NCBI RefSeq assembly: GCF_001194135.2
Contig: NC_068988.1
Coordinates: forward strand, 68,956,210 to 69,020,209
Length of the DNA stretch: 64,000 nucleotides
Direction of reading: 5' to 3'
Origin: Octopus bimaculoides
Lineage: Eukaryota
The notes beneath the pieces are model-generated. The model was not told the origin of the DNA, did not search any database, and saw nothing but the letters and a program-made list of their open reading frames with translations. A program made the translations under genes and the position numbers. Shown here piece by piece: positions 5,682-64,000 of this stretch. The first letter of the stretch is position 1. Each line of letters begins with the position of its first letter.

Positions 5682-6059
5682 CAGGAGTGGCTGTGTGGTA
5701 AGAAGCTTGCTTCCCAAACACAGTCCCACATTATGGCACCTTGGGTAAGTGTCTTCTATTATAGCCTTGTGCCTTGTGAGTGGATTTAGTAGATGAAAAT
5801 TAAAAGAAGCTTGTCATGTGTGTGTATGTGTGTTTTTATATGTGTCCGTGTTTGTCCCCTGCCACTGCTTGACAACTGGTGTTGGTGTGTTTATATCCCT
5901 GCAACTTAGAAGTTCATTGAAAGAGACCAATAAAATAAGTACCAGGTTTAACAAAAAAAAAGAAACAAAAATAAAAAGTACTGGGATTGATTCATCCATC
6001 TAAAATTCTTCAACACAGTGTCCCAGCATGGCTACAGTCTAATGACTGAAACAAGTAAA
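5682..6059 (+). mobile_element. tRNA-derived SINE, family A
   Basis: Head caggagtggctgtgtggtaag, internal (TG)n, tail cagcatggctacagtctaatgactgaaacaagtaaa; matches the copies at 16094 and 42086. Confidence 0.85.
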
Positions 6060-6462
6060 CTTGTAAAGAGAGATATCTGATACATTTTTCATTATTTCAC
6101 ATCAGACAACAAAGGGCAGTAACTTATCCTAATAAACATATCACAACTGTCATTATGCTTATTCCCTGTATCATAATTAGGATCCACATTATTATAGTCA
6201 CTAGACAGTGGATAGGAAAATAAGTACAAGAGCTGACAGGGATGACAGAGCAATAGAACAGCAGCCCAGATACCTTACAGCATTTAGTTACACTGCTTAA
6301 CATTTTGAGTTTTCATTAAATAAATATCGCAGTCAAGGCCTGAAGGCAAGGTATTTGTTTATATATCCTCTTGGATATACACAAAACATATACATATATT
6401 CATATACCTACCTGTCTCTCCCACACTCTGTGTGAGTGTATGTGTGTGTATCTATCTATCTA

Positions 6463-6525
<63 letters not shown>

Positions 6526-7213
6526 TTGTTTAAAAGAGTTCCAACACTGTCTGTTTTTTATGTTTTATTTATATTCCTGCAGAACCAATGTGGGGTATAG
6601 AATATGNNNNNNNNNNNNNNNNNNNNNNNNNNNNNNNNNNNNNNNNNNNNNNNNNNNNNNNNNNNNNNNNNNNNNNNNNNNNNNNNNNNNNNNNNNNNNN
6701 NNNNNNNNNNNNNNNNNNNNNNNNNNNNNNNNNNNNNNNNNNNNNNNNNNNNNNNNNNNNNNNNNNNNNNNNNNNNNNNNNNNNNNNNNNNNNNNNNNNN
6801 NNNNNNNNNNNNNNNNNNNNNNNNNNNNNNNNNNNNNNNNNNNNNNNNNNNNNNNNNNNNNNNNNNNNNNNNNNNNNNNNNNNNNNNNNNNNNNNNNNNN
6901 NNNNNNNNNNNNNNNNNNNNNNNNNNNNNNNNNNNNNNNNNNNNNNNNNNNNNNNNNNNNNNNNNNNNNNNNNNNNNNNNNNNNNNNNNNNNNNNNNNNN
7001 NNNNNNNNNNNNNNNNNNNNNNNNNNNNNNNNNNNNNNNNNNNNNNNNNNNNNNNNNNNNNNNNNNNNNNNNNNNNNNNNNNNNNNNNNNNNNNNNNNNN
7101 NNNNNNNNNNNNNNNNNNNNNNNNNNNNNNNNNNNNNNNNNNNNNNNNNNNNNNNNNNATTCCTCTATACACAATCATACAAAAAAACCACCTTTTTTGT
7201 ATTTATTTTTACT

Positions 7214-13835: not shown

Positions 13836-14976
13836 ATTAATCATTGGGATAAAAACCTAGTCATATATACATACATACATACATACATACATACAAGCAT
13901 CAATGCATGTATGTGTGTATATATGTAATTATATGTGTGTGGGTATGTGTTTGTGCATCTACAAAAGTTGTGATGTTCAGCCAGTGTTTCTGTTGTCAGT
14001 TCTCTCAACAAATCATTCCCTGACTTCATATCCTCAAAACCATTTGGAATAAAAGATCCCTTACCTAAAGAACAGATATGGGTTACTGTCATGAAGAGCA
14101 TATGGTTGTAAACCAATTTCTCAATAACATATTCTTCAAACTCATGCAAGAATGGAAAAATGTATGGAAAACTAAGAAATGGAGGGAATAAGAGAATTAC
14201 GCCATGAAAGTATTCTGTCTACTAAATATGAATGCAGTTCCTTCATTATGATATACATAACCAGTGGGAGTTAACAATACAAAGACAACAGATGCACAAA
14301 GATGATAGTGGGTTTTTCTTCAATTCATTTACAGCCTTAAACCAGAAAAAATATTTGAATAATTCAAATGTAAATTTTTCTTCCATATTTGTTGTTGCCT
14401 TAACTTGTTGCAGAATAAAGTAAATTATTAGTAATGAGAAAAGCTTTTTGAGCAGCATTCAGACATACCTCAGAGCTGGAAGAAGTTTCCATGTATAAAT
14501 TTGCTTATTTTCATATGTCCTTCAATTCTATTTTCACTGGAGACTGGATAATATAGATATTTTATTTCATTATGTCGTAAGAAGTTTATTTCTCAACCAC
14601 ATGGTTCCAGGGTCAGCCTCATTGTGCAACACCTTAGGCAGGTGTCTTCTGCTGTAATCCTGGGCTGACCAACAACTTTTACATATGGTGCTAATACAGC
14701 TTACCTTCATTTTTTCCAGTGAAAGAAACTTTTGTATATCCTGAATTGTCTATCACCGAGAGATAATGTTCATACTTTAGACCAGCAGATTATTGCATAT
14801 TTATTCTGGGAAATATCATGCAATCTTTTTTAAAAATCAGAGAAGCTATGCCTATATTTTACAGATAACTTCCATCACTTTACCATCCTAATTTTAAAAC
14901 TATATTCAATGAAATAGAATTTGCTTGAGAGAGGGAATATAGTCAGTAAATATATATACAAACACACACATATATA

Positions 14977-16093: not shown

Positions 16094-16514
16094 GGCGTAG
16101 GAGCAGCTGTGTAGTAAGTAGCTTGCTTATGAACCACATGGTTCCGGGTTCTGTCCCACTGCATGGCACCTTCGGCAAGTGTCTTCTACTATAGTCTTGG
16201 GCCGACCAAAGTCTTGGGCCGACCAAAGTCTTGTGAGTGGATTTGGTAGATGGAAACTGAAAGAAACCCGTCGTATATATGTATATATATATATTTATAT
16301 ATATGTATGTGTGTTTGTGTGTCTGTGTTTGTCCCCCCAACATCGCTTGACAACCGATGCTGGTGTGTTTACGTCCCCGTAACTTAGCGGTTCGGCAAGA
16401 GAGACGGATAGAATAAGTACTAGGCTTATCCTGGGGTTGATATGCTCGACTAAAGGTGGTGCTCCAGCATGGACACAGTCAAATGACTGAAACAAGTAAA
16501 AGAGTAAAAGAGTA
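16094..16514 (+). mobile_element. SINE family A with internal 17-bp tandem duplication
   Basis: Complete head to (gtaaaaga)n tail; gtcttgggccgaccaaa occurs twice (16194-16227). Confidence 0.9.
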
Positions 16515-17465
16515 ATGGATAAATATTCAAAAAAGAAAGATATTAGAGATGAGGCTAAGTCCAGAGGCAAACAACCATCAACCTCTATTATCAAAAAGAG
16601 AAACATTAATCAACAATATTGTGATAATTATTTGAAATTTGGATTTTATTGGTCTGTTGACGTTCACAAACCAAGTCAACCATGTGTAGTGTGCGATGAA
16701 ACAATGTCGAATGATTCCATGGTACCAAGTAAGTTAGAAACACATTTTAATTCAAAACATTCATCTCTGAAAGATAAAATGCTTGATTACTTTCAAAGAC
16801 TGTTAGAGCAGAAATCAAAACAGCAAAGTTATTTTGCGAAAATAATGACCATGTCTGAACAAGCCCAGCAAGTGTCAAATCAGGAAGCTGAAATGATAGC
16901 ATTAACATCTAAATCCCACATGCTTGCTGAGTCAGTCATCCACCGAGCTTGCAAAAAGATGGTAAAATCCATGTTTGGTGAATAGACTGAGAAGGAATTG
17001 AACAATATCTCATTTTCAAATGATACAATATGTAGAAGAATATTGAAAATTATAGAAGAAAATGTTCAGAAAAAGCTTAAGAATTCTAACTTTGCTTTAA
17101 CCATGGATGAATCCACTGACATCAGTAATAAAAGTCAATTGCTTGAATTTGTACATTTTATTGACAAGAATGAAATAATCAATCATTTTTTTGTGCTGTA
17201 AAGAAATGTCCACAACTACAAGAGGTCAGGATATTTTTGATTTGATAACTGGCTACCTCAAAGAAATGAATTTGTCTTGGAGGTCCTGTGTTGGCATTTG
17301 CACCAACGGAGCCCCATGCATGACAGGCTGTATTAAAGGATTTGTATCCAAATCTCATTCATACTCATTGCTTTCTACCTTGAGAAGTTCTTGTTTCAAA
17401 AATATCGCAGGAAGATTTAAAGGTTGTGTTACATCAAGTTGTCGGAATGGTCAATTATATAAACT
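16515..17465 (+). pseudogene. Buster-type hAT transposase relic (ZBED5/ZBED8/SCAND3-like)
   Basis: BED finger YLKFGF..PCVVC..M.PSKLETHFNSKH, S.SNDTI.RRI, FALTMDESTDIS, GICTNGAPCMTG; in-frame TAG at 16983, frameshifts near 17195 and 17355, 3' truncated. Confidence 0.9.
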
Positions 17466-17467
17466 TG

Positions 17468-18060
17468 AAAAGCACTTGGAGAGCGCAGACCTCCACCAAA
17501 CCAGTCAGAGCAGCACTACGATGACGACGACGATGACCACCACCACTACCACCATACCGCAATCACCACCATCACAACCACCAACATCATCAGCAGCATT
17601 GTCATTGCTTCCACTTCAACCACACACACTGCCATCAACATTATCATGATGGTTTTCTTGACAGTCATTTTCACCACCACAACCAGTATAACCACTACAA
17701 TACCATCCTCACACAACTAACACTATCATCAACACCACTATCACCACCATCACCTCAGTATCACACATCACACTGCTCCTGTCACCATTATAACCACCGA
17801 TACTATTTTATCCTCCTCCCATACTTATCTCGACCATCATCATCATCAACATTATCTCTGCTTTCATCACAACCACCGTCAAAACTACGATCACCACAAT
17901 CAGTTTCTTTACACAGTTGAAAATCCATTATCTGATACTCATTGGACCGAGATTGTTGCAGATTTTTGATTTTTCTAATTTTGGAGTGATTTATTAAAAA
18001 AAAAATTGCCTCTACAAAACGGAACAGTTTGAGGTTAAAAACCAAGTCTAAACACAATAG
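17468..18060 (+). mobile_element. Probable Helentron-associated non-autonomous element with internal (CAC/CAT)n low complexity
   Basis: Starts AAAGCACTTGGAGAGCGCAGACCTCCACCAA, resembling the 5' end and subterminal repeat of DINE-1/HINE-type elements (recalled); 3' terminus not confidently found. Confidence 0.5.
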
Positions 18061-28745: not shown

Positions 28746-29279
28746 TGTATGTATGTATGAATGCATGTATATATATATACATAATGCAAAGCATACACTT
28801 CTCTTTCTCATGTAATATTAACTTGATTATGTTCTTTTCCTTTGCACAGCTAAAAGGCGACACCAAAAAAAAAAAAATATTAATTCTCAATAAATCATTG
28901 GATCATTTTTGATGGCAAATTTTGCAACATTGACTTGACTTGTTTCAGTATTTTTTTAACTCTGTTGAACCATCATGCTTTTTCTTTTAATGCAACATAT
29001 GCACACAACATATGTATATATACATGAGCATATGTGTGTGTTTATACATATATATGCGTGTGAATATATATGATATATATATATATATATTTGTGTGTAT
29101 ATATATGATATATATATATATGTATATATGATATATATATATATATGTGTGTGTATATATATGATATATATATATATATGTATATATGATATATATGTAT
29201 ATGTATATATGATATATATATATATGTATATATGATATATATATATATGTATATGTGTGTATGCATATATATGTGTGTT

Positions 29280-29319
<40 letters not shown>

Positions 29320-29320
29320 T
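28643..29320. repeat. (TA)n-rich compound microsatellite blocks
   Basis: Direct observation (28660-28785 and 29000-29320). Confidence 0.9.
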
Positions 29321-30298
29321 GTAGACTAGAATAGTTTTAAAATCTTTACTCATTGCTCTTCTAGTAAAGACTTTTAAANNNNNNNNNNNNNNNNNNNNNN
29401 NNNNNNNNNNNNNNNNNNNNNNNNNNNNNNNNNNNNNNNNNNNNNNNNNNNNNNNNNNNNNNNNNNNNNNNNNNNNNNNNNNNNNNNNNNNNNNNNNNNN
29501 NNNNNNNNNNNNNNNNNNNNNNNNNNNNNNNNNNNNNNNNNNNNNNNNNNNNNNNNNNNNNNNNNNNNNNNNNNNNNNNNNNNNNNNNNNNNNNNNNNNN
29601 NNNNNNNNNNNNNNNNNNNNNNNNNNNNNNNNNNNNNNNNNNNNNNNNNNNNNNNNNNNNNNNNNNNNNNNNNNNNNNNNNNNNNNNNNNNNNNNNNNNN
29701 NNNNNNNNNNNNNNNNNNNNNNNNNNNNNNNNNNNNNNNNNNNNNNNNNNNNNNNNNNNNNNNNNNNNNNNNNNNNNNNNNNNNNNNNNNNNNNNNNNNN
29801 NNNNNNNNNNNNNNNNNNNNNNNNNNNNNNNNNNNNNNNNNNNNNNNNNNNNNNNNNNNNNNNNNNNNNNNNNNNNNNNNNNNNNNNNNNNNNNNNNNNN
29901 NNNNNNNNNNNNNNNNNNNNNNNNNNNNNNNNNNNNNNNNNNNNNNNNNNNNNNNNNNNNNNNNNNNNNNNNNNNNNNNNNNNNNNNNNNNNNNNNNNNN
30001 NNNNNNNNNNNNNNNNNNNNNNNNNNNNNNNNNNNNNNNNNNNNNNNNNNNNNNNNNNNNNNNNNNNNNNNNNNNNNNNNNNNNNNNNNNNNNNAACCAC
30101 TTTACTTTAAATTGGCACTAATAATCAGTTTCTGCTAGCTAGAAAGGAAGAGATTAATAAATATCTTGCCCAAGGAAGTAAAATATCAGCAACAATATTT
30201 TTTCTGTCATATCTTCATATTGCATTTGATCCACCAGGTTATACATTACATGTATAATAATTATCAATGAATCCTTCAACATACATTTGTACAGACAT

Positions 30299-30366
<68 letters not shown>

Positions 30367-30390
30367 TAGACAGATAGATAGATAGATAGA

Positions 30391-30610
30391 TATCTTTTAT
30401 TTTTGTTTCCGTCATTTGACTGTAGTCATGTTGGGGCAGTGCCTTGAAGAGCTTTTTAGTCAAACAAATTGACCTTATTTTTTAAGCCTGGTGCTTATTC
30501 TATTGATATCTTTTGCCAAAACCAACAAGTTAAGAGGGCATAAACACACTAACACCAGTTGTCAAGCAGTGGTGAGGGGACAAACACAGACAGAAAGCAG
30601 AAAGACATAC
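30391..30610 (-). mobile_element. SINE family A 3' part, left flank of the LTR insertion
   Basis: Reverse complement of the family A body and tail; the matching head lies at 33625-33700. Confidence 0.75.
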
Positions 30611-30789: not shown

Positions 30790-33422
30790 GTGGCAATGAG
30801 GATTTAAACAACTCACAAGAAATTCATAAACTTAATGAGGATTTAAACAACTCATGAAGAATTAATAAACTCGACAAGGATTTTAACAGCTCACAAGGAA
30901 TTAACTCATGAGGCGTTAACAAACTCACAAAAGCTTTTGCTTTGCAAATCTTACAAAAAAAAAATAATAATCCTAGAATTGTGGCAGATATGTTAGCCAG
31001 TTTGCTTGAGTTCCAAAAACAGCAACTGAAAGAACAACAGCAGTAGCTACAACTACGAGAACAACAGCCAAAGCAACAACAACAACTGAAAGAAGAGCAA
31101 TAGCAGCAGATACAACTGAAAAAGGAACAACAGAAGCAACAACAACAACAAATTATATTCTAACAACAAATGCTGCAATAACTGAAGTCATCAGGAAAGT
31201 CAGAAAAAGTGTTCTCGACAGACTATGTAGTGAACTCCATAACAGAGTTCAAATACGAATCTGATAAAAGAGTTATCTTCAAAACATACTACAAAAGATA
31301 CGAGCAAATCTTTGAGAAAGAATGCAAAGATTGGGATGACAAGATAAAAACGTGCTTAATCTTGAGAAACTAGCAACATGAACATGAACGTACAGTAATT
31401 ATGTTCTCTCAAGCAAACCTTCTGATATAAACTTTAATGACACAATAAATATATTGTGTCAAATTTTCAATGAGAAAAGCTCATTGTTCAACTTAAAGAG
31501 GTAAACATAGACGAGGACTATATCACATATGCTGGTTGAGTAAACAGGAAATGTGAGATGCTTAAGTAGGAAGAATAAACGCCAGATATGTTTAAATGTC
31601 TGACTTTTACACAGGGACTTACAGCCGAAAAGGACGCAGAAGTTAGAACTAGAATTCTTGCAAAGCTAGAACAAAACCAGGAGGCAACCCTACAGCAATC
31701 GTCAGAAGAAGGTGAAAAGATAGTCAAATTAGCAGACAACACAGAGGAAATCGAATGGAAAGATTGTTTCCAAGTAAAACAAGTGTGAAATAGTCAGAAT
31801 AGAGATAAAGTGTTTTCTAAAAAACACGACAAAATTCAGATAATAAACCCATGTTTTGCATGTGGAAGTATACACCCAAGGAAAAATTGTCCATTGAAAC
31901 ATACAGAGTGCTTTTATTATGAAATTATAGGACATATAAAGATGCATTGTAGAACAATGATGACAAAATATCAGAACAAAGGAAAAAAATAAATAGTATG
32001 TCATTGGAAGCAATTAGTAATATAACGATGAGGAAATTCGTGAAGGTGAAAATCAGAAATACAAGTGTTAAAATGCAGTTGGACTCTGGTAGTGATATCA
32101 CCATTATAAACAAAAATAATTGGAAATATGTCAGGAAGCTGAGATTGATTAGATCAAAATGGGTAGTACATGGTGTTATGGGAAAAAGATTATACTATTT
32201 TGGTGAATTTGTATGTTATGTGACATTTCAAGGTCAAACAAAAAAGGCAACGATATATGTGTTAAAATATCCACTTAATTCATTCGGCACAGAACTAGTC
32301 AAAGTATGGAATATGCCCATAAGTATTTTGTGTGGAAATATAGTTGGTTCAGTCCAAGGCTCAAAAGCAGCTGAGGGACTGAAACAAAAAAATTACAGTA
32401 AAATAGAGTGGAACACCTTTATGTAAACCAAACCAAAATGAAAACTCACTCACGATAAAAAGTAAACATTGTTCAAAAGTAAATGTTCTGTGGTCAAGAC
32501 TGCACATTGATTTCGCTGATCCTTTAAATGATTCTTACTATTTAGTGGTAGTTGATAATTTCTCAAAATGTCCAGACATTTGTAAGTGTAAAAAAAACAA
32601 TCTCCTCAACTGTGATAAAATTTTTACATGGATTGCTTGCAAGATTTGACATATCAAACAAGATAGTGTTTGACAATGGAAAGCAATTTGTGTCTAGTGA
32701 ATTTTATAAATTTTGTTAAACGTTCATGGTAGAACATATAACTACGGTGCCATACCAATCCAAATCTAATGGACAGGCAGAACGTTTTGTCAATATCTTG
32801 AAGAGAGCCCTTAGAAAATTGAATAAAGAAGTCACAGATGAGGTAGCTCTACAACAATTTTTAAGAGTGCATTGTGTGACACCAAATCCAAATACACCAG
32901 CCAGTAGCTCACCAGTCTGATGTTTGAAAGGAAAGTAAAATCAGTTTTTGATAAATCGCTACTTGGCAAGGAAATAAAAAGTGCCAGGGAAGACAGCAAG
33001 ATTCTTTAAAGTTGGTGAAAAGGTGTATATGAGGGCATACAAGAATAGAAAACAGAGTTAGGAAGACGGCATCATTATCAAATGCATAGGTTAAATGATG
33101 TATTGGGTAAAAAGTAGAAAAGGCATTCAAAAGAGATACAGGAGCCAACTGAAAAAGACATTCATGGAAAGCAAACCAAGGTAGTTGGAGAAACCAATAG
33201 AATGGTTGTACAATACATTCCAAGTACCAACACCACTGCAGGTGACTGAACCCAGGCGTACAAGTGAGAGAAAAAGAAAATATACAGAGTTCCTGAAAAT
33301 AGATACCAAGTGCAAAAAATATCAAATCATAAGAAAAGAATCTCAAAAAAGGGAGGTGGGGTGAAAAAAAAAATTATTGCTAAATAAAATGACACTTCCT
33401 AAGAAAAACTTAAAAGGGGTGA

Positions 33423-35059: not shown

Positions 35060-35329
35060 ACAAAAAACAAGAACAGCAACAGCAGCAAGAAGAAGAAGAA
35101 GAAGAAGCAGAAGAAGAAGAAGAAGCAGAAGAAACAGAAGAAGAAGAAGAAGAAGAAGGAGAAGAAGAAGAAGAAGAAGAAGAAGGAGAAGAAAAAGAAG
35201 AAGAAGAAGGAGAAGAAGAAGAAGAAGAAGAAGAAGAAGAAGAAGAAGAAGAAGAAGAAGAAGAAGAAGAAGCAGAAGAAGCAGAAGAAGAAGAAGAAGA
35301 AGAAGAAGAAGAAGAAGAAGAAGAAGAAA
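35060..35329. repeat. (GAA)n trinucleotide repeat, ~270 bp, with GCA/GGA interruptions
   Basis: Direct observation. Confidence 0.97.
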
Positions 35330-36491
35330 TGTAGTAGTAAATTATTTGTTATTCATTGACAAAGATATCAAGCAACTCGATACTTTGGTAAATACAGTCA
35401 TCTTCAATCATGGTATGAACATGGGGTTTGGAGTTAATAGGGTATCATGGTAGTGAAAAGAGATGAGTATGAATATAGTGAAGGGTTAAAATAATCAATA
35501 GACAAGGAAATTAAGAAAGTTGACAAAGGTGAAGGAGACAAGTATCTTAGTACATTTGATACAGATGGTATCAAAAGGTGTGAGATAAAAGAAAAGTTCT
35601 CAGGAATATTTGAGTAAGGTGAGAGAAGTCTTGGAATCAAAATTTAATGGTGTAAATACTATCACTGATATTAACTCAATGGTCATTAGCATAACAAAGT
35701 ATGGAGGAGATATAGTCAAATGGACGAAGGATGACCTAAAGCTCTTTGACAGATGCACCAGAAAATTGTTAATGATATATAGAGTATTCCATTCCCAAGG
35801 AGATGTTGATTGGCTATGTTTGAAGAGATGTATAGGAGGACGAAGATTAATAAGTGCTGGGGATTCTGTGAATATGGAGGTTGCCAATCTCATAAAGTAC
35901 ATCAATGAAAGTAATGAAAAGTTAATTAAGTCAGTAACATAGGAAAAGGAAAATATCTTTGATCATGTGAAGAAGGAAGATGTACAACATGAAAAGGAAA
36001 GGTCCTCTTGTAACAAACATTTACATAACAAATTCTTTGTAATTACAGATTTGAGGAAATGAGAGTTAGAACTGGCAGAAAAAGCAGCCTGGAAAGAGAG
36101 ACCGAAAGAGTTATTATGTATCTACTGGAGCAAGCATTGCAAATGAGAAACATCAGGAAAGTCTAAGACAAAGAAAATATTGATAGGATGTGTAGGATGT
36201 GTGGTTAAAGAGAAGAAACAATTGCACATATAGTTTCAGAATGTCTAAAACTAACACAGAAAGAGTAAAAAAATTGGAGACATGATGGAGAGACATGATA
36301 GAAAGGCAAACGTTGAACATTGGGAAAATTATAAGTACAAACTTTTTTCTCCTGAAAAGTGGTACGACCCTAAGGTGGAGAATGAAAATATAAAGATCCT
36401 GTGAGATTGTAAATTGTAGGCAGATAAGGTCATGGAACACTCTTGATCTGACATTGTTATCTTTTGAAAAAAGTCACATGAGTGGTAGATA

Positions 36492-36554
36492 TTTTTTTAG
36501 TCTTTTACTTGTTTCAGTCATTTGACTGCAGCCATGATGGAGTTCCACCTTGAG
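36492..36554 (-). mobile_element. Isolated 3' tail of SINE family A (or its partner LINE)
   Basis: Minus aaggtggaactccatcatggctgcagtcaaatgactgaaacaagtaaaagac matches the tail at ~16452-16505. Confidence 0.85.
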
Positions 36555-36663
36555 AAAAAAATATGGAATGCTTCACGAATTTGCATGTTATCTTTGCACA
36601 GGAGTCATGCTAAACTTCTCTCTATTGTTCCAATTTTAGAATATGTACTGCCATAGCTAGTAT
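36555..36663 (-). pseudogene. U6: U6 snRNA retropseudogene
   Basis: Minus ggcagtacatattctaaaattggaacaatagagagaagtttagcatgactcctgtgcaaagataacatgcaaattcgtgaagcattccatattttttt matches metazoan U6 (recalled) with about 11 substitutions; ACAGAGA box mutated; first ~12 nt ambiguous. Confidence 0.95.
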
Positions 36664-36984
36664 GCTTCTTTTGATACCAGAGTGAAAGAGAAAAAACAAG
36701 AAAAGTTTGAGAAGTACAATGATTTCAGATATGAGATTGGGCAGCTGTGGTAATGTAGGAGAATAATGGTAGTTCTACTTGTCATCAGTGTGTTGGGCAT
36801 TGTAAGCAGAAATTTTGAAAAATTTGAGGAACATTTTGATTGCGGCATAAACTTCTCTGTTATGCAGAAAGACTGTTTATTAGGTACAGCAAGAATCTTA
36901 AGAAAAGTATGAAGTGAAATGAATTGGCATAAAACCTAAGATTGAGAGATAAAAACAAATAATAACAATGAACCTTACTACTAT

Positions 36985-42085: not shown

Positions 42086-42530
42086 AGAAGTGGCTGTATG
42101 GTAAGTAGCTTGCTTACCAACCACATGGTTCTGGGTTCAGTCCCACTGTGTGGCACCTTGGGAAAATGTCTTCTACTATAGCCTCATGCCAACTAAAGCC
42201 TTGTGAGTAGATTTGGTAGACGGAAANNNNNNNNNNCTTGGGAAAATGTCTTCTACTATAGCCTCATGCCAACTAAAGCCTTGTGAGTAGATTTGGTAGA
42301 CGGAAACTGAAAGAAGCCCAGTGTGTGTGTGTGTGTGTGTGTGTCTGTGTTTGTCTCCCTAACATCGCTTGACAACTGATGCTGCTGTGTTTACGTTCCC
42401 GTAACTTAGCGGTTTGGCAAAAGAGACTGATAGAATAAATACTAGGCTTACAAACAATAAGTCCTGAGATCGATTTGCTCAACTAAATGGCTGCAGTCAA
42501 ATGACTGAAACAAGCAGAAGAATAAAAGAA
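42086..42530 (+). mobile_element. SINE family A spanning a 10-N gap
   Basis: Head, (TG)n and tail present; 70-nt duplication around the gap. Confidence 0.85.
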
Positions 42531-43992
42531 AAAAGAATAGATACCAAGAACTGAAAATAGTTATGAGTGGTTACATGGTGTGTTTTGATACACAATTGAT
42601 GGTAGGCCCTGTGCATGTGAGTTTTTTTAACTTTTTGAATTTGGACTTTGAAAGATTTCAAAAATTATTTTGAAATTATACACAGTAATAAATGACAGAT
42701 AGATTCAGACTGTCCATACTTTGAAAATTATAATAAAAAAATTTGTTTTAATGATTGATTGCAAACCTGTAAAAATAGTTTTGCAAAATTTCTACATTTT
42801 AAGCCCTTCACCCCCTCCACTTCACCCTCCTCCTCCCCCACGTACACTACAAGCCATAACATTTTCAATTTTGACCTTTTACAAACATTATTTCAGAACT
42901 TCTTCAAACATTGGGAATGTTGATTACACAGAAATGCTTTCCATTTTTGCAACCTGTATGGCTTAATGTTTTAAAGTTATACTTTAGGGTTATGGTATAA
43001 GTTTAAGGTTAAGATATAAAGTTAGGGTTTTGGTTAAATGAAGAAGAACTGTTTGTGTAGATAGTATCAGAAGCAATATTGATAAAGTATACTAAAATGA
43101 AGAAATGTGTGTGTGTGTGTGTGTGTGTGTGTTTGTCCATTGCTGCTGACGTTTTCCATTTCATTTTTGTTTTTTTCTCTTTCATTCAGTATCACTTCTA
43201 CCTCTATTTCATTATTTCCCTGGGGAATTTTTGACAGGCCTCTTTTGTTCATCTGGTTTAATGTTTTAAAATTATTTTTCATTCTGGTTTAAGAAAAGAA
43301 GTTTGAAAAACATTAGTTAGGCTTCCAGAAATATATTGTGGGAAGATTTTTGAAAACTGTAGTTTCTAAATCTGAGGGTGTACCATTGAATAGTGAGGGG
43401 AAAGTGCTGTCCAGTGCATTTGCTTAGCAATGGACAAGGCACTGTTGATTCTCCATAAAGAAAAAAATGGAAAGAAATTGCTCAGGTCACTGTTTTGAAG
43501 AGGAAAAGAGTAACTTTCCAGATCCATTATCTTGTAAAGCATGTCCTTGACTGTTTTTATACATGCATGCATGAATGCATGTTTGCATGTGTGTGTCTGT
43601 ATATGTCTGTATATGTCTGTGTATGTATGTATATATAAACTACCACATCAAATCTTGATAGATATATTAACTATGGGTGCAGTAATTTTTCCCCTCCACC
43701 ATAGCACCTTAAATGAATAATTATGGATCTTATGTGCATCCATATTGTAAATGACAGCAAAAATGGCTACCAAAGAGCTAAAATCACACCGGCTCAATGA
43801 AATAAGGAGAATTTGGTAAACTATGCTGTATATAAAAGTATTTATTTGTTGTTGCTGTTAATCCAGAAATCAACCTTAGTTGAAAATATATATGATCAAA
43901 ACTGCTCCAGCCATGACAATGTTGGAATATTCTGTCTAAATTGTGGTGTCGCCATTTTATGACTTTTAGCCCCAGGTCAAACCTGATTGATA

Positions 43993-48901: not shown

Positions 48902-49085
48902 TATATGTATGTGTATATATATATATATGTAATTATATATGTGTGTGTGTGTGTGTATATATATATATGTACACACACACACTCACACACATATATATAC
49001 ATATATGTATATATATGTGCATATATATAGATTTATAGATATATGCATATACATAGATACCCACACACACACACACACATACATA
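48741..49085. repeat. (CT)n/(TA)n/(TG)n compound microsatellite
   Basis: Direct observation. Confidence 0.95.
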
Positions 49086-54290: not shown

Positions 54291-54859
54291 ATACTGTTTA
54301 AATTGTATCCACTCCATTGCTACTCTATCTTAAAATGAACAATTTTATTTCACACTCCACCAACTTATAAAATATTCATGAATTTCATTCCTTCTTTCCT
54401 ACTCTTTATACTTACATTTTCTTTTATCTTTTACTTGTTTCACTCATTTGATTGTAGCCATGCTGGGGCACCACCTTGAAATTTTACTTGAATGTAAATA
54501 ACAACTTTTATAATATTTCTCCCACTAGCATTGATGAAGTTCTTTTGATAAGTAAGATATGAAATAGCGATTGAGGGAGTATGAGTTACAAACAGTCACC
54601 ATGGTGATAGATGTCAATAGAAGGACAACCAGAAACAGAGGAATTGATGCCAAGCAGTACAAGAGAATAAATGGAGGAATGCATTGGATATCAACAAATC
54701 CAATGCAATTCTAAATAAATGCACATTCATATACTCGTGTGCGTATGTACATGTATACATATATGTATATACATACATGTTATAGCAGATATGGTCATCT
54801 CAAAAAGAAAATTAACTCAATACATGTCTAAAGTATAGATTTTTATTGAGGGAGTTGAA

Positions 54860-55189: not shown

Positions 55190-57125
55190 CTTTCCGGACA
55201 ACCCAATATTAACATCTGTCTTGACTGAATATGTCAATAGTTTTTTAAAAGATAGTGGCATCTTCTCTAATGATCAAAAAGGATGTAAACATGGGTCCTA
55301 TGGTTGTAAAGAGCAGTTACTCATCGACAAGGTGATCTTGGAAGATTGCCACAAACAACACAAGAACTTGTTGATAGCTTGGATGTCTGGAAATGTATAA
55401 AATAGCACCTACTCTGTGAAACGTCTTATCTGTAAATATGAGATCATGGAAAACTACACTGACTTTGAACAGTGACAATGAATCCCTCAATGCTGGAGAT
55501 TTAAGAATTTCATGTGTCATTTTCCAGTGCGACTCTCTATCACCACTCCTCTTTTTTCTAGCCTTAATACCTCTCTCAGAGTTACAAATACCGAGGGGAA
55601 TTTGAAGGTGATGGGATCAAACATTCAGGGATGAGGGAAAAGATCAGAAAAGAATGTTATCACAGGGTAAGGGCAATACTCAAGACAGAGCTGAATGCAA
55701 GAAACAGGATCGAAGTGATCAATACTTTAGCCACACTGGCGGTGACTTACAATTTCAATATTATAAACTGGTCAATCATCAAAATCTGTAACGGCAGAAA
55801 AATTTTTTAAATTGTTGACAATGCATAGAATGCACCACTCTAAGGTAGATATAGAATGACTTTATCTGCCAAAAACAGAGGGTAGCCGTGGACTTTTACA
55901 ACTGGAATTACCAATGAAGATTGCCACAATTGGCCTAAATACCTATTTGAAAAACTCTGAGGAATAGATATTAAAAGTTGTCTCAAAACAGAAAAACAAG
56001 AAAATGTCATATTTAGTAACAAAACAGGTCAAGAAATATCTAAGTGAATTCCAAATACAACATATCTCAGAATTAGCCATACTGGAAGCAAGCACAAAAA
56101 TGTTAAGCATATAAAAAACCATGCTAAAACTGCTGCCTTAGACATTCTTACTGACAAACGGCAAGAAAAACCTCTCAATGGCAAATACTCAAAGAGAGCT
56201 AATAATGCCGATGTTGACAAAGCACTTACCCATCAATGGTTAGTGTCTTCTGGTTTAAAATCAAAGACAGAAGAGTTTATCATAGTAGCCCAAGATCAAT
56301 GCCTACCTACAAGGAGCTACCAGGCCAACATATTAAAGAACAACAGTAGCCCAACATGTCGTGTATGTAAACAACAAAATGAAACCATCGATGATACTGT
56401 CTCCATGTGCAGTCTTCTTGCACCTACAGAGTAACTCAACAGGCATGATAGAGCAGCACAATATATTCACTGGGTAATTTGCAAAGACTTGGATCTGCCC
56501 CATGATAAAAACTGGCGGGAATACGAACCACCTTCAGTGCTTGAAAATGATCACATCTCACTCCTCTGGAACTTCACCATTCAAATTGGCAGAAAGATAG
56601 ATGTGAATAGGTCAGATATTACACTGAAGGACTTCCAACAAAATTCATACATCTTCATCAATATGATTGTCCCAGTCGACATAAATGTATCTGTCAAGGT
56701 TTACCAAAAACTGAGCAAGTATAAAGATCTCGAAATAGAAACTGGCAAAATGTGGAAACTCGAGACTAAAACAATACCTGTTGTCATAGGTGTCCAAGGA
56801 ATGATAGCAAAACGGGCTGATTCCTACCTAGCTCAGATACTAGGAAATACAAAAATGGCAGAAATTCAAAAAATAGTGCTCATGGGAACAGCCCATATCC
56901 TATGCAAAATATTGTCTATGTAATCCCAAATTTTAAAAGAAACTTATTTTCTTATGTCTTCTTAAACATTCTCTAGAACAATACTTTATGCAAAACCAAA
57001 TATATGGCACCCTAGTCATAATACCAATTTGAACTTCTAGCTTGTCTCTCAAGGTCTCTGGAGTCAACTTGTACAAATACAAAGCAACAGTCAAACATAT
57101 AATAATAACAACAACAATAATAATA
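55190..57125 (+). mobile_element. R4/Dong-like LINE, copy 2 (RT, CCHC, RLE, 3'UTR, (AAT)n tail)
   Basis: QKGCK.GSYGCKEQLLID, IFQCDSLSPLLF, TEEFIIVAQDQCL.TR, CRVC..ETIDD.VSMC, RHD..A..IHW, KYKDLEIE..KMWKL.T..IPVVIG. Confidence 0.92.
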
Positions 57126-57689: not shown

Positions 57690-57903
57690 GATTTCATATT
57701 TGGACACAAGGGCAGCAAGTTCAGGGGAGGGGGCCAGTCGATTACATTGACCACAGTGTTCGGCTTGTACTCTTTTTATCAACCCTGAAACGATGAAAGG
57801 CAAAATCAACCTCAATGGAATTTGAACTCAGAATGTGAGGAAGAAAAAAATGCTACTAAACATTTTGCCCAGCATGCTAGCAATTCTGCCAGCTCACTGC
57901 CTT
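57690..57903 (-). mobile_element. SINE family B
   Basis: Same motifs as 57127-57325. Confidence 0.8.
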
Positions 57904-57971
57904 AATAATAATGATAATAATAATATGATGATGATGATAGTAATAATAATAATAATAATAATAGTAATAAA

Positions 57972-62481: not shown

Positions 62482-63965
62482 CAATCATCATCATCGTCAT
62501 CATCGCTTTCCCTGCTGGTATGGGTTGGACGGTTTCACTGTGGTCTGGAGAGCCAGCAGCTGCACCAGGCTCCAATCTGATCTGGCAATGTTTCTACAGC
62601 TGGATGCCCTTCTTAATACCAACCACTCCGAGAGTGTAATGGGTACTTTTTACATGCCACTGGCACGAGGGCCAGTCAAGCGATACTGGCATTGACCACA
62701 CTTGAATGGTGCTTTTTACATGCCACCAGCATCGGAGCCAGTCGACATTTGGTAGACTCTCTTTCTCCCATTCATTCTCTTCATTTAGCAACCTTTCATA
62801 GTGGTGTCTCCAAGTCTCTCTCCTTTCAGCCTCATTAAATGCAAGTGAGCCATCATCCTATGACATCACGATTCTCTCTCACACACTGTCTTGCAACATG
62901 AAACACTTCAAGTCTTTGGTCCTCATGACACAAAACACAGACAAATTTTTTTGCTCCCCTCTAGCTAAGTAAACCTGTCTCCTAGATTCCCTTCTGGCAA
63001 TCTGATACAATTCCCTGCTACCACCATTCTTCCAGTCCTTCAATGCCTTTTTCTTTTCCCTAATAGCCCTGTCAAATACATTGTTCCACCACCATGTTAC
63101 CTTGAGTTGAGAGGTGACTTTACACCATCCACAGATCTGGTCAGTAGCCCTCAGAAGGTTGCCTGTTGAAACCTCTAGTTGTCTTCCACATCATGGGATG
63201 CTATATCCCCCTCTATTTCGTCAAAAGCTTTGAGTAATACATCTCTAAATCCCTGTCCAATCACAGGATCTTTAAGCTTCCAGACCCTTCTTTTCCATGC
63301 TGGTTGTCTTCTGGGAATCCATTTAGCCCTGGTCCCAAAGTCGCTAACTACTAATCTATGTTGTGGGGTGCATTCTTCACCTGGGAAGGTTTTGGCATTT
63401 ATAAGTAGCCATCTTTCCCATTTCCTGGCAAGGTTGTACTCAATTTGACTAGTGTATCCACCAGATCAGTAGGTGAATAGGTAACTGACTGGTTTCCTGA
63501 AGTTAGTATTACAAATCATAAGATCATTTGCATCGCAGAACTCCAGCAGCCTGGTTCTGTCCTCATTGCAGGAACCAAAATCATCGCCTCCATGTACACT
63601 ATGGAAGCCCCCTGCATGTTGCCCATTGAAGTCACCAGCCACAAAGAGAAGATCCCTGTCATTTGTCAACGAGGTAGTCTGCATGAGACTGTCATAAAAT
63701 CGGTCTTTCTTTTCATCAGGTAGCCCTGTCTGAGGGGCATAGGCCAAGATAATGGTTGCTAATTCACATTGCAGCACTAATCTAAAGTATTCTATCACAG
63801 ACTCTGACTTGATTACCTTATCAACCTATTTCTCTGCAAGAATTAAACCCATGCCCCCGACCCTGTCAGTGTTCCCTGCCCAGAAGATTTTATACCTATG
63901 ATTTTTACTTTTGAGAAACCTAGCAGAACTTCCTCTTCGCCTTACTTCTTGGATGCAGGACAAAT
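62482..63965 (-). mobile_element. RTE LINE with APE domain joined directly to the 3'UTR (RT deleted)
   Basis: Minus AYAPQTG, LFVAGDFNG, LLEFCDANDL.ICNTNFRKP, HYERLLNEENEW..LPNVD, then the 3'UTR at 62740 and a (TGA)n tail. Confidence 0.88.
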
Positions 63966-64000
63966 CTACACATCTCTGTTCAATCATATATATATATATA

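What the first reader, a model, noticed from the sequence alone, without database searches (positions are those of the whole stretch)
36492..36663. U6 snRNA fused to a retroposon 3' tail (U6 chimeric retrocopy), nested antisense in an R4/Dong LINE
Seen: on minus, a near-full-length U6 including its 3' oligo-U is followed after ~3 nt (ctc) by only the last ~60 nt of the tail shared by SINE family A. This ~170-nt unit interrupts the LINE endonuclease region between ..GTAGAT and ..CFFDT. Four of about 11 changes are CG>TG/CA, consistent with methylation-driven decay of a dead copy. Established: U6/L1 chimeras arise in mammals by U6 ligation or template switching during retrotransposition. Inference: this may be an equivalent process in a mollusc, in which a non-L1 3' recognition tail mobilised U6. 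I am not aware of this being described in cephalopods.
Basis: partly seen in the sequence, partly recalled or inferred. Interest (0 to 1): 0.75.

Follow-up and report, generated by a model that had tools for sequence, protein, structure and literature searches.

The report
Dead U6 copy fused to SINE tail
A decayed copy of the U6 splicing RNA sits fused to the last ~63 bases of a common SINE/LINE tail inside an old LINE, so it was most likely pasted in by one retrotransposition event; this is already known in platypus and lizard but apparently not reported in molluscs.

Summary
Rfam finds one full-length U6 (window 36557-36663, minus strand, 83.7 bits, model 1-105/105). Its oligo-T runs directly into ~63 nt that match the 3' end of a tRNA-derived SINE family with six other tail copies in the window. 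The 172-nt unit splits the PD-(D/E)xK endonuclease domain of an older, 5'-truncated R2-like LINE on the plus strand.

Three corrections:
- The 'ctc' linker is tail sequence, so there is no untemplated spacer.
- The downstream LINE flank reads ASFDT, not CFFDT.
- The R4/Dong assignment was not tested.

Best reading (confidence 0.72): a dead-on-arrival U6 chimeric retropseudogene made in one event. The machinery that recognises the tail primed on it, then either switched template to U6 or copied a pre-ligated U6-tail RNA. No target-site duplication is visible.

Recurrence in the genome could not be tested.

Chimeras of U6 with LINEs other than L1, and with their SINEs, are already published for platypus and Anolis (Doucet et al. 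2015). This is therefore a new member of a known kind, possibly its first mollusc example. Interest is low to moderate.

The parts
36557..36663 (-). Full-length U6 snRNA retrocopy (pseudogene). The 5' stem-loop starts at 36663 and the copy ends in 5 T (36561-36557). The ACAGAGA box is mutated to AGAGAGA.
   Evidence: Rfam RF00026, 83.7 bits, model 1-105/105. Mismatch and CpG count. No U6 upstream flank: LINE antisense sequence abuts nucleotide 1.
36552..36561 (-). U6/tail junction TTTTTTTCTC. The first 5 T are the U6 end; the next TTCTC aligns with TTCT(T)C of the tail. The last 1-2 T could belong to either partner (microhomology), and there is no untemplated linker.
   Evidence: Alignment A1 of the seven tails. 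The Rfam alignment ends at 36557.
36492..36556 (-). 5'-truncated 3' tail module (~63-65 nt) shared with the window's tRNA-derived SINE family and, by inference, its unidentified partner LINE.
   Evidence: blastn 86.7% over 60 nt to SINE copy B (E 9e-16) and 83.8% over 68 nt to copy 54413-54492. Core 33-mer: 5 hits against 0 expected. Alignment.
36515..36528 (-). Conserved tail hairpin CAGTC-AAAT-GACTG, a candidate recognition element for the mobilising reverse transcriptase.
   Evidence: RNAalifold on six tails predicts this 5-bp stem. The pairs are kept in 5-6 of 6 copies, with no compensatory changes. Its function is inferred, not tested.
36492..36510 (-). 3' terminus AAGTAAAAGA + CTAAAAAAA, that is two NTAAAAGA-type units as at the end of the other copies. 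The boundary with the LINE flank is ambiguous over 36492-36494.
   Evidence: Comparison of the 3' ends of the seven copies. Frame analysis of the flank.
35340..36491 (+). Host LINE, upstream part. It is a degenerate, 5'-truncated non-LTR element with many stops and frameshifts. It carries a CCHC-type zinc knuckle (CRMCG...H...C) and the start of the RLE nuclease, which ends in ..KKSHE-VVDI at the insertion point.
   Evidence: Six-frame translation. 28 relatives at E<=1e-10, best 45-47% identity. Alignment. Weak zf-RVT Pfam hit.
36664..36912 (+). Host LINE, downstream part: ASFDTRVKEKKQEKFEKY...LLGTARILRKV-stop, the rest of the RLE domain and the C-terminus.
   Evidence: The domain profile hits the R2 RLE domain in PDB. 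Deleting 170 nt joins VVDI to ASFDTRV in one frame.

Best explanation
This is a dead, processed U6 chimeric retropseudogene made in one retrotransposition event.

The enzyme of a LINE that recognises its own 3' tail (hairpin plus NTAAAAGA repeats) nicked the DNA inside an older R2-like LINE. It primed reverse transcription on the 3' end of a tail-bearing RNA, either a SINE or the LINE itself. After about 63 nt it continued on U6 snRNA and copied it to nucleotide 1.

Two routes give this product. The reverse transcriptase may have switched template onto the U6 oligo-U end, helped by 1-2 nt of U microhomology. Alternatively, U6 may already have been ligated to a cleaved tail RNA, as RtcB does for U6/L1 in human cells.

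The copy carried no U6 promoter, so it was inert on arrival. It has since decayed, mainly at CpG sites.

Shown: the parts, their order, orientation and exact abutment, and the split LINE domain. Inferred: a single event, the enzyme involved, and template switching versus ligation.
For: - U6 is complete, model positions 1-105, and ends in the canonical 5 U. Human U6/L1 pseudogenes have the same hallmark: full-length U6 ending in 5-7 T joined to a variably 5'-truncated element (PMC6789731).
- The tail follows in the same orientation with no spacer, no poly(A) and no tail of its own for U6.
- The tail is truncated at its 5' side but complete at its 3' side, with two terminal repeat units like ordinary copies. 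That is the polarity expected from priming at the 3' end.
- Copies of the same tail that align over only ~80 nt sit at two other places in the window, so short 5'-truncated insertions of this module are routine.
- LINE coding sequence abuts both ends. VVDI|ASFDTRV aligns with IVDVACPFDTRV of relatives, so the unit is an insertion without any gene flank.
- Chance adjacency is small. With 7 tails in 64 kb, the probability that a U6 3' end lies within 4 nt of a same-strand tail 5' end is about 2e-4.
- The same kind of chimera with tail-dependent LINEs and SINEs is documented in platypus and Anolis (PMC4476161).
Against: - Only one copy was seen, so recurrence is untested.
- No target-site duplication is visible. 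The longest word shared by the flanks is 5 nt, away from the junctions, which equals chance. About one codon of the LINE may be missing relative to relatives. A single-event signature at the ends is therefore absent, although small or absent duplications are usual for non-L1 elements.
- The partner LINE that owns the tail was not found in the window or elsewhere.
- Divergence looks uneven: ~16% at conserved U6 positions against ~7% for the tail versus the other copies. The numbers are too small, and CpG content too different, to weigh this.
Confidence: 0.72

Rival explanations
1. This is one copy of an amplifying U6-headed family. A master locus (a U6 gene with its upstream promoter and this tail downstream) repeatedly produces U6-tail RNA that the LINE mobilises, so many copies share the identical junction.
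For: The structure (small-RNA head plus LINE-type tail) is that of a SINE. snRNA-headed SINEs exist: SINEU with U1/U2 heads, founded by template switching (PMC4494074). Finding one copy in a 64-kb window would be unlikely if the genome held only a handful, though this holds only if the window was picked at random.
Against: There is no second U6-like sequence in the window even at E<=1, against 6 other tails. By general knowledge of animal U6 genes, the promoter lies upstream of the gene and is not carried by copies. This copy is old and decayed.
Confidence: 0.1
2. Two independent insertions happen to abut. One possibility is a 5'-truncated tail copy first and a U6 retrocopy exactly at its 5' edge later; the other is U6 first and a tail copy exactly after its T-run later.
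For: Truncated tail copies are frequent (7 per 64 kb). No duplication brackets the whole unit. A T-run could attract some endonucleases.
Against: The chance of exact abutment in the same orientation is about 2e-4. U6 has no poly(A), tail or duplication of its own, so it lacks a means of independent insertion. No extra bases lie between the parts.
Confidence: 0.07
3. A read-through transcript was retrotransposed. A real U6 gene lies just upstream of a truncated tail copy, RNA polymerase III occasionally ran through the T-run, and the longer RNA was mobilised through its tail.
For: It gives the same product without template switching or ligation.
Against: By general knowledge of Pol III termination, a run of 5-7 T is an efficient terminator. 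It also needs the same unlikely adjacency at the source locus.
Confidence: 0.05
4. Assembly artefact: a false join of U6 and SINE reads in a draft assembly.
For: The window is a gapped draft. It has N runs and an exact 70-nt duplication around a 10-N gap at 42157-42306.
Against: U6 and the tail share at most 2-3 T, far too little to mis-join. Both outer flanks are the same LINE domain in register. No gap is nearby.
Confidence: 0.02

Closest known systems
U6-L2 and U6-Mon-1 chimeras of platypus; U6-L2, U6-RTE and U6-AnolisSINE2 chimeras of Anolis (Doucet et al. 2015, PMC4476161)
   Same: U6 is fused at its 3' end to the 5'-truncated 3' part of a LINE that recognises its own tail, or of that LINE's SINE. 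The fused piece is short and ends in a simple repeat rather than poly(A). Target-site duplications are small or absent.
   Different: Those are vertebrates, seen in tens of copies with defined partner LINEs, and platypus U6 parts are mostly 5'-truncated. Here there is one copy, U6 is full length, the host is a mollusc-type genome, and the partner LINE is unidentified.
Human and mammalian U6/L1 chimeric pseudogenes (Buzdin 2002 and Garcia-Perez 2007, as cited in PMC4494074; Moldovan 2019, PMC6789731)
   Same: Full-length U6 ending in 5-7 T is joined directly, in the same orientation, to a 5'-truncated retroelement with an intact 3' end. The copy is inert.
   Different: L1 ends in poly(A), makes 6-19 bp duplications and cuts at a known consensus site. 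Here the 3' end is a hairpin plus NTAAAAGA units and no duplication is seen.
SINEU (U1/U2-headed SINEs of crocodilians; Kojima 2015, PMC4494074)
   Same: An snRNA sequence is added 5' of a retroposon tail, probably by template switching.
   Different: SINEU are amplified families with shared internal features and a Tx1 partner. No amplification is shown here, and the head is U6.
Chimeric retrogenes of Magnaporthe grisea made by a LINE (Gogvadze et al. 2007, PMC2104539)
   Same: Template jumps during LINE reverse transcription, seen outside mammals.
   Different: A fungus, with other RNAs than U6 as the main partner. Only the title and abstract were seen here.

Membership tests
U6 chimeric retropseudogene (template-switch or ligation type) | U6 sequence reaching its mature 3' oligo-U end, directly followed in the same orientation by a retroelement | tested here: met
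   The Rfam alignment reaches model position 105 with 5 U. The tail follows with no spacer.
U6 chimeric retropseudogene (template-switch or ligation type) | The retroelement part is 5'-truncated but has its complete 3' terminus | tested here: met
   Only the last ~63 nt are present, ending in two terminal repeat units as in the six other copies.
U6 chimeric retropseudogene (template-switch or ligation type) | No U6 gene flank or promoter, i.e. an RNA-derived copy | tested here: met
   LINE coding sequence (antisense) abuts U6 nucleotide 1.
U6 chimeric retropseudogene (template-switch or ligation type) | One target-site duplication bracketing the whole chimera | tested here: inconclusive
   No shared word at the junctions beyond chance. 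The boundary is ambiguous by 1-3 nt, and no close LINE copy was available for an empty site. Non-L1 chimeras often have duplications of 1-9 bp or none.
U6 chimeric retropseudogene (template-switch or ligation type) | Recurrence in the genome with variable junction points | not testable with these tools
The metagenome, prokaryote-genome and viral collections lack even the SINE tail core. The protein database holds no close relatives.
SINE (amplifying family with a small-RNA head) | Many copies sharing the same head-tail junction | tested here: inconclusive
   One copy in 64 kb and no other U6-like hit at E<=1. The genome was not searchable.
Functional U6 snRNA gene | Intact invariant ACAGAGA box and conserved core | tested here: not met
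   The box reads AGAGAGA, and 10 of 63 strongly conserved positions are changed.
R2-like (RLE-bearing) non-LTR retrotransposon, the host element | C-terminal PD-(D/E)xK restriction-like endonuclease after a reverse transcriptase and a zinc knuckle | tested here: met
   Relatives carry RVT_1 and zf-RVT. Their reverse transcriptase matches solved R2 proteins at E 4e-26. The C-terminal profile matches the R2 RLE domain at E 4.5e-6. The host copy aligns through the RPD...D...K motifs.
R4/Dong clade specifically (host element) | Phylogenetic placement with R4/Dong reverse transcriptases | not tested
   No reference set was available. Dong elements are reported in Octopus bimaculoides (PMC9115989), which makes the assignment plausible only.

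The most novel reading that the evidence does not exclude
U6-tail chimeras are recurrent in this cephalopod-type genome, with various junction points. That would show that a LINE dependent on its own 3' tail, or its very abundant SINE, joins with U6 in an invertebrate too. Less likely, one such chimera became the founder of a U6-headed SINE-like family.
Probability: 0.3. Interest if true: 0.45.

Novelty: new member of a known kind. Interest (0 to 1): 0.3.

Why it matters
If it is a true single-event chimera, it extends U6-retroelement joining from vertebrates and one fungus to molluscs. It would also show that about 63 nt of this tail (hairpin plus terminal repeats) was enough to carry a foreign RNA into the genome. 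That would help define the recognition module of the as yet unidentified LINE driving the dominant SINE family of this genome. It does not open a new question: the principle was established in platypus and Anolis.

Tried and rejected
- Junction pattern TTCCATATTTT-N(5-35)-GCAGTCAAATGACTGAAAC: 0 hits in metagenome contigs and genome contigs.
- Control with the bare tail core: also 0 hits in those two collections and in viral contigs. Those collections hold no DNA with this SINE, so the negatives say nothing.
- The host-LINE protein search gave only 45-47% identical relatives. The one locus fetched (L001, ENA ERZ25066843) has no SINE, tail or U6, so no empty site could be defined.
- A 51-aa antisense ORF that spans the tail and U6 was used as a protein query to catch other chimeras. 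No candidates.
- The RTE-like endonuclease ORF, used to look for the tail's owner, gave one 56% hit on a 702-bp contig.
- An exact look-up of the 144-aa LINE ORF was not on record.
- A search for a reverse-transcriptase core (YxDD) in the window, to find a LINE ending in this tail, found none.
- The tail sequence was searched for in papers and in the supplements of PMC9115989. None found.
- Folding the whole 172-nt unit gives z = -0.12, no special structure.
- The sub-threshold miRNA and scaRNA hits of the permissive Rfam scan lie on TA/TG microsatellites. I rejected them as artefacts.

Full report
**What is there**

On the minus strand, 36663-36557 is a complete U6 snRNA sequence. Rfam RF00026 scores it 83.7 bits against a gathering score of 44, E 8e-20, covering model positions 1-105 of 105. 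It is the only Rfam family reaching threshold in the 64 kb. A permissive scan (E<=1) adds only microsatellite artefacts and no second U6 fragment.

The copy is dead:
- 10 of 63 strongly conserved positions differ from the consensus, 8 of them transitions.
- Of the 6 CG dinucleotides in the Rfam consensus, 3 now read TG or CA, 2 lie in the ambiguously aligned 5' stem-loop and 1 is retained. A further GCG>GCA change lies where the consensus is not CG.
- The catalytic ACAGAGA box reads AGAGAGA.

**The tail**

After the U6 T-run the sequence is TTCTCAAGGTGGAACTCCATCATGGCTGCAGTCAAATGACTGAAACAAGTAAAAGACTAAAAAAA. Its 33-nt core occurs five times in the window at <=3 mismatches, against none expected. 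blastn brings the total to seven copies.

- Four copies end full or partial bodies of a SINE: 5683-6072+, 16100-16525+, 42090-42543+ and 30393-30609-. By reading the sequence, the head carries A- and B-box-like motifs, although ARAGORN calls no tRNA.
- Two copies, 33734-33813- and 54413-54492-, are 5'-truncated. They align over ~80 nt to each other, and SINE homology may run somewhat further 5'.
- The seventh copy is the one behind U6.

Aligning the seven shows that the longer tail variants read ...CTAAAA-TTCTTCAAGG... or ...GCTCTTCAAGG.... The junction is U6 with the canonical five U, then the tail, with 1-2 T that could belong to either partner and no untemplated bases.

All copies end in two or three NTAAAAGA-like units, and so does this one. 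A 5-bp hairpin, CAGUC-AAAU-GACUG, is conserved in the tails. There is no covariation, so its role is inferred.

**The host**

On the plus strand, about 35340-36912 is a degenerate, 5'-truncated non-LTR retrotransposon.
- Its read-through translation finds 28 relatives, the best at 45-47% identity.
- These relatives carry RVT_1 and zf-RVT. Their reverse transcriptase matches solved R2 proteins at E 4e-26.
- A profile of their C-terminal 175 residues matches the restriction-like endonuclease domain of R2 at E 4.5e-6.

In the alignment, relatives read K..C.IVDVACPFDTRV. The host copy reads KKSHE..VVDI, then the 172-nt insert, then ASFDTRVKEK. Deleting 170 nt joins VVDI and ASFDTRV in one frame; deleting 167 nt gives the canonical spacing.

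The unit is thus an insertion inside the nuclease domain, antisense to the LINE, with at most a few bases of target gained or lost. 'R4/Dong' was not tested, though Dong elements are reported in octopus (PMC9115989).

**How it most likely arose**

The parts have the polarity expected from target-primed reverse transcription that starts on the tail: an intact 3' terminus, a truncated 5' side, then a second RNA copied to its first nucleotide. U6 has no poly(A), no tail and no duplication of its own, so it has no independent route into the genome.

Exact same-strand abutment by chance is about 2e-4 at the tail density of this window. I therefore read it as one event, in which the enzyme that recognises this tail carried U6 along.

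Two routes fit and cannot be separated here:
- The reverse transcriptase switched template onto the U6 oligo-U end. The 1-2 nt of shared U would help.
- U6, with its cyclic-phosphate end, was first ligated to a cleaved tail RNA, as RtcB does for U6/L1 in human cells (PMC6789731).

**Weak points**

- No target-site duplication is visible. The longest word shared by the flanks is 5 nt, away from the junctions, as expected by chance.
- Only one copy is known.
- The LINE that owns the tail was not found.

**What could not be done**

The metagenome, prokaryote-genome and viral collections do not contain even the SINE tail core. The protein database has no close relatives of the window's LINEs and no ORF resembling the antisense of the chimera. 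Recurrence, the empty site and expression therefore remain open.

**Comparison with what is known**

Doucet et al. 2015 (PMC4476161) describe the closest cases:
- 40 U6 chimeras with L2 or its SINE Mon-1 in platypus, with duplications of 1-9 bp in 72.5% of them.
- U6 chimeras with L1, L2 and RTE, and six with AnolisSINE2, in Anolis.

They conclude that template switching to U6 is a general property of non-LTR retrotransposons.

Other published cases:
- Human U6/L1 pseudogenes have a full-length U6 ending in 5-7 T.
- SINEU shows snRNA heads added to retroposon tails.
- A fungal case exists.

No paper in the searchable library links U6 chimeras with cephalopods or molluscs.

**Verdict**

It is a single decayed instance of a published phenomenon in a new phylum. 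Novelty: new member of a known kind. Interest: 0.3.

Noticed in passing
window 56489-56923 (+); (TAA)23 at 57903-57970: A second R2-like LINE copy of another family, with an intact 144-aa C-terminal ORF (RSD...N...K motifs, ...LMGTAHILCKILSM). A (TAA)23 array lies about 1 kb downstream. The exact protein is not on record in the collection.
   Followed up: partly
window 62900-63990 (-): A fragment of an RTE-like LINE: apurinic-type endonuclease (weak Pfam Exo_endo_phos_2 hit) followed by the start of the reverse-transcriptase region, then broken off. Only one relative (56% identity) exists in the protein database.
   Followed up: partly
window 42157-42306: SINE copy C contains a 10-N gap flanked by an exact 70-nt duplication (42157-42226 = 42237-42306). 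It looks like a gap-closing artefact of a draft assembly. Larger N runs lie near 6600-7170 and 29050-29750.
   Followed up: no
window 36486-36492, 6070-6080, 30395-30405: Three of the seven tail copies are followed directly by ATATCT. Copy D runs into a (TATC)n/(TGTC)n microsatellite at 30326-30400. This could be a target preference of the mobilising enzyme or slippage of the terminal repeat.
   Followed up: no
window 35087-35328: A (GAA)80 microsatellite sits exactly at the 5' truncation point of the host LINE.
   Followed up: no
window 31998-32426 (+): A 142-aa ORF with a retroviral-type aspartyl protease domain (Pfam RVP, just above its cut-off). It is probably a remnant of an LTR retrotransposon.
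   Followed up: partly
window 16515-17649 (+): Two ORFs (156 and 152 aa) start right after SINE copy B. By eye they resemble hAT-type transposase-derived proteins, but they have no Pfam hit.
   Followed up: partly
window 48920-49080, 29000-29330, 13850-13950: Sub-threshold Rfam hits to mir-297, mir-466, mir-3149 and others all lie on TA/TG-rich simple repeats. They are artefacts of low complexity.
   Followed up: yes
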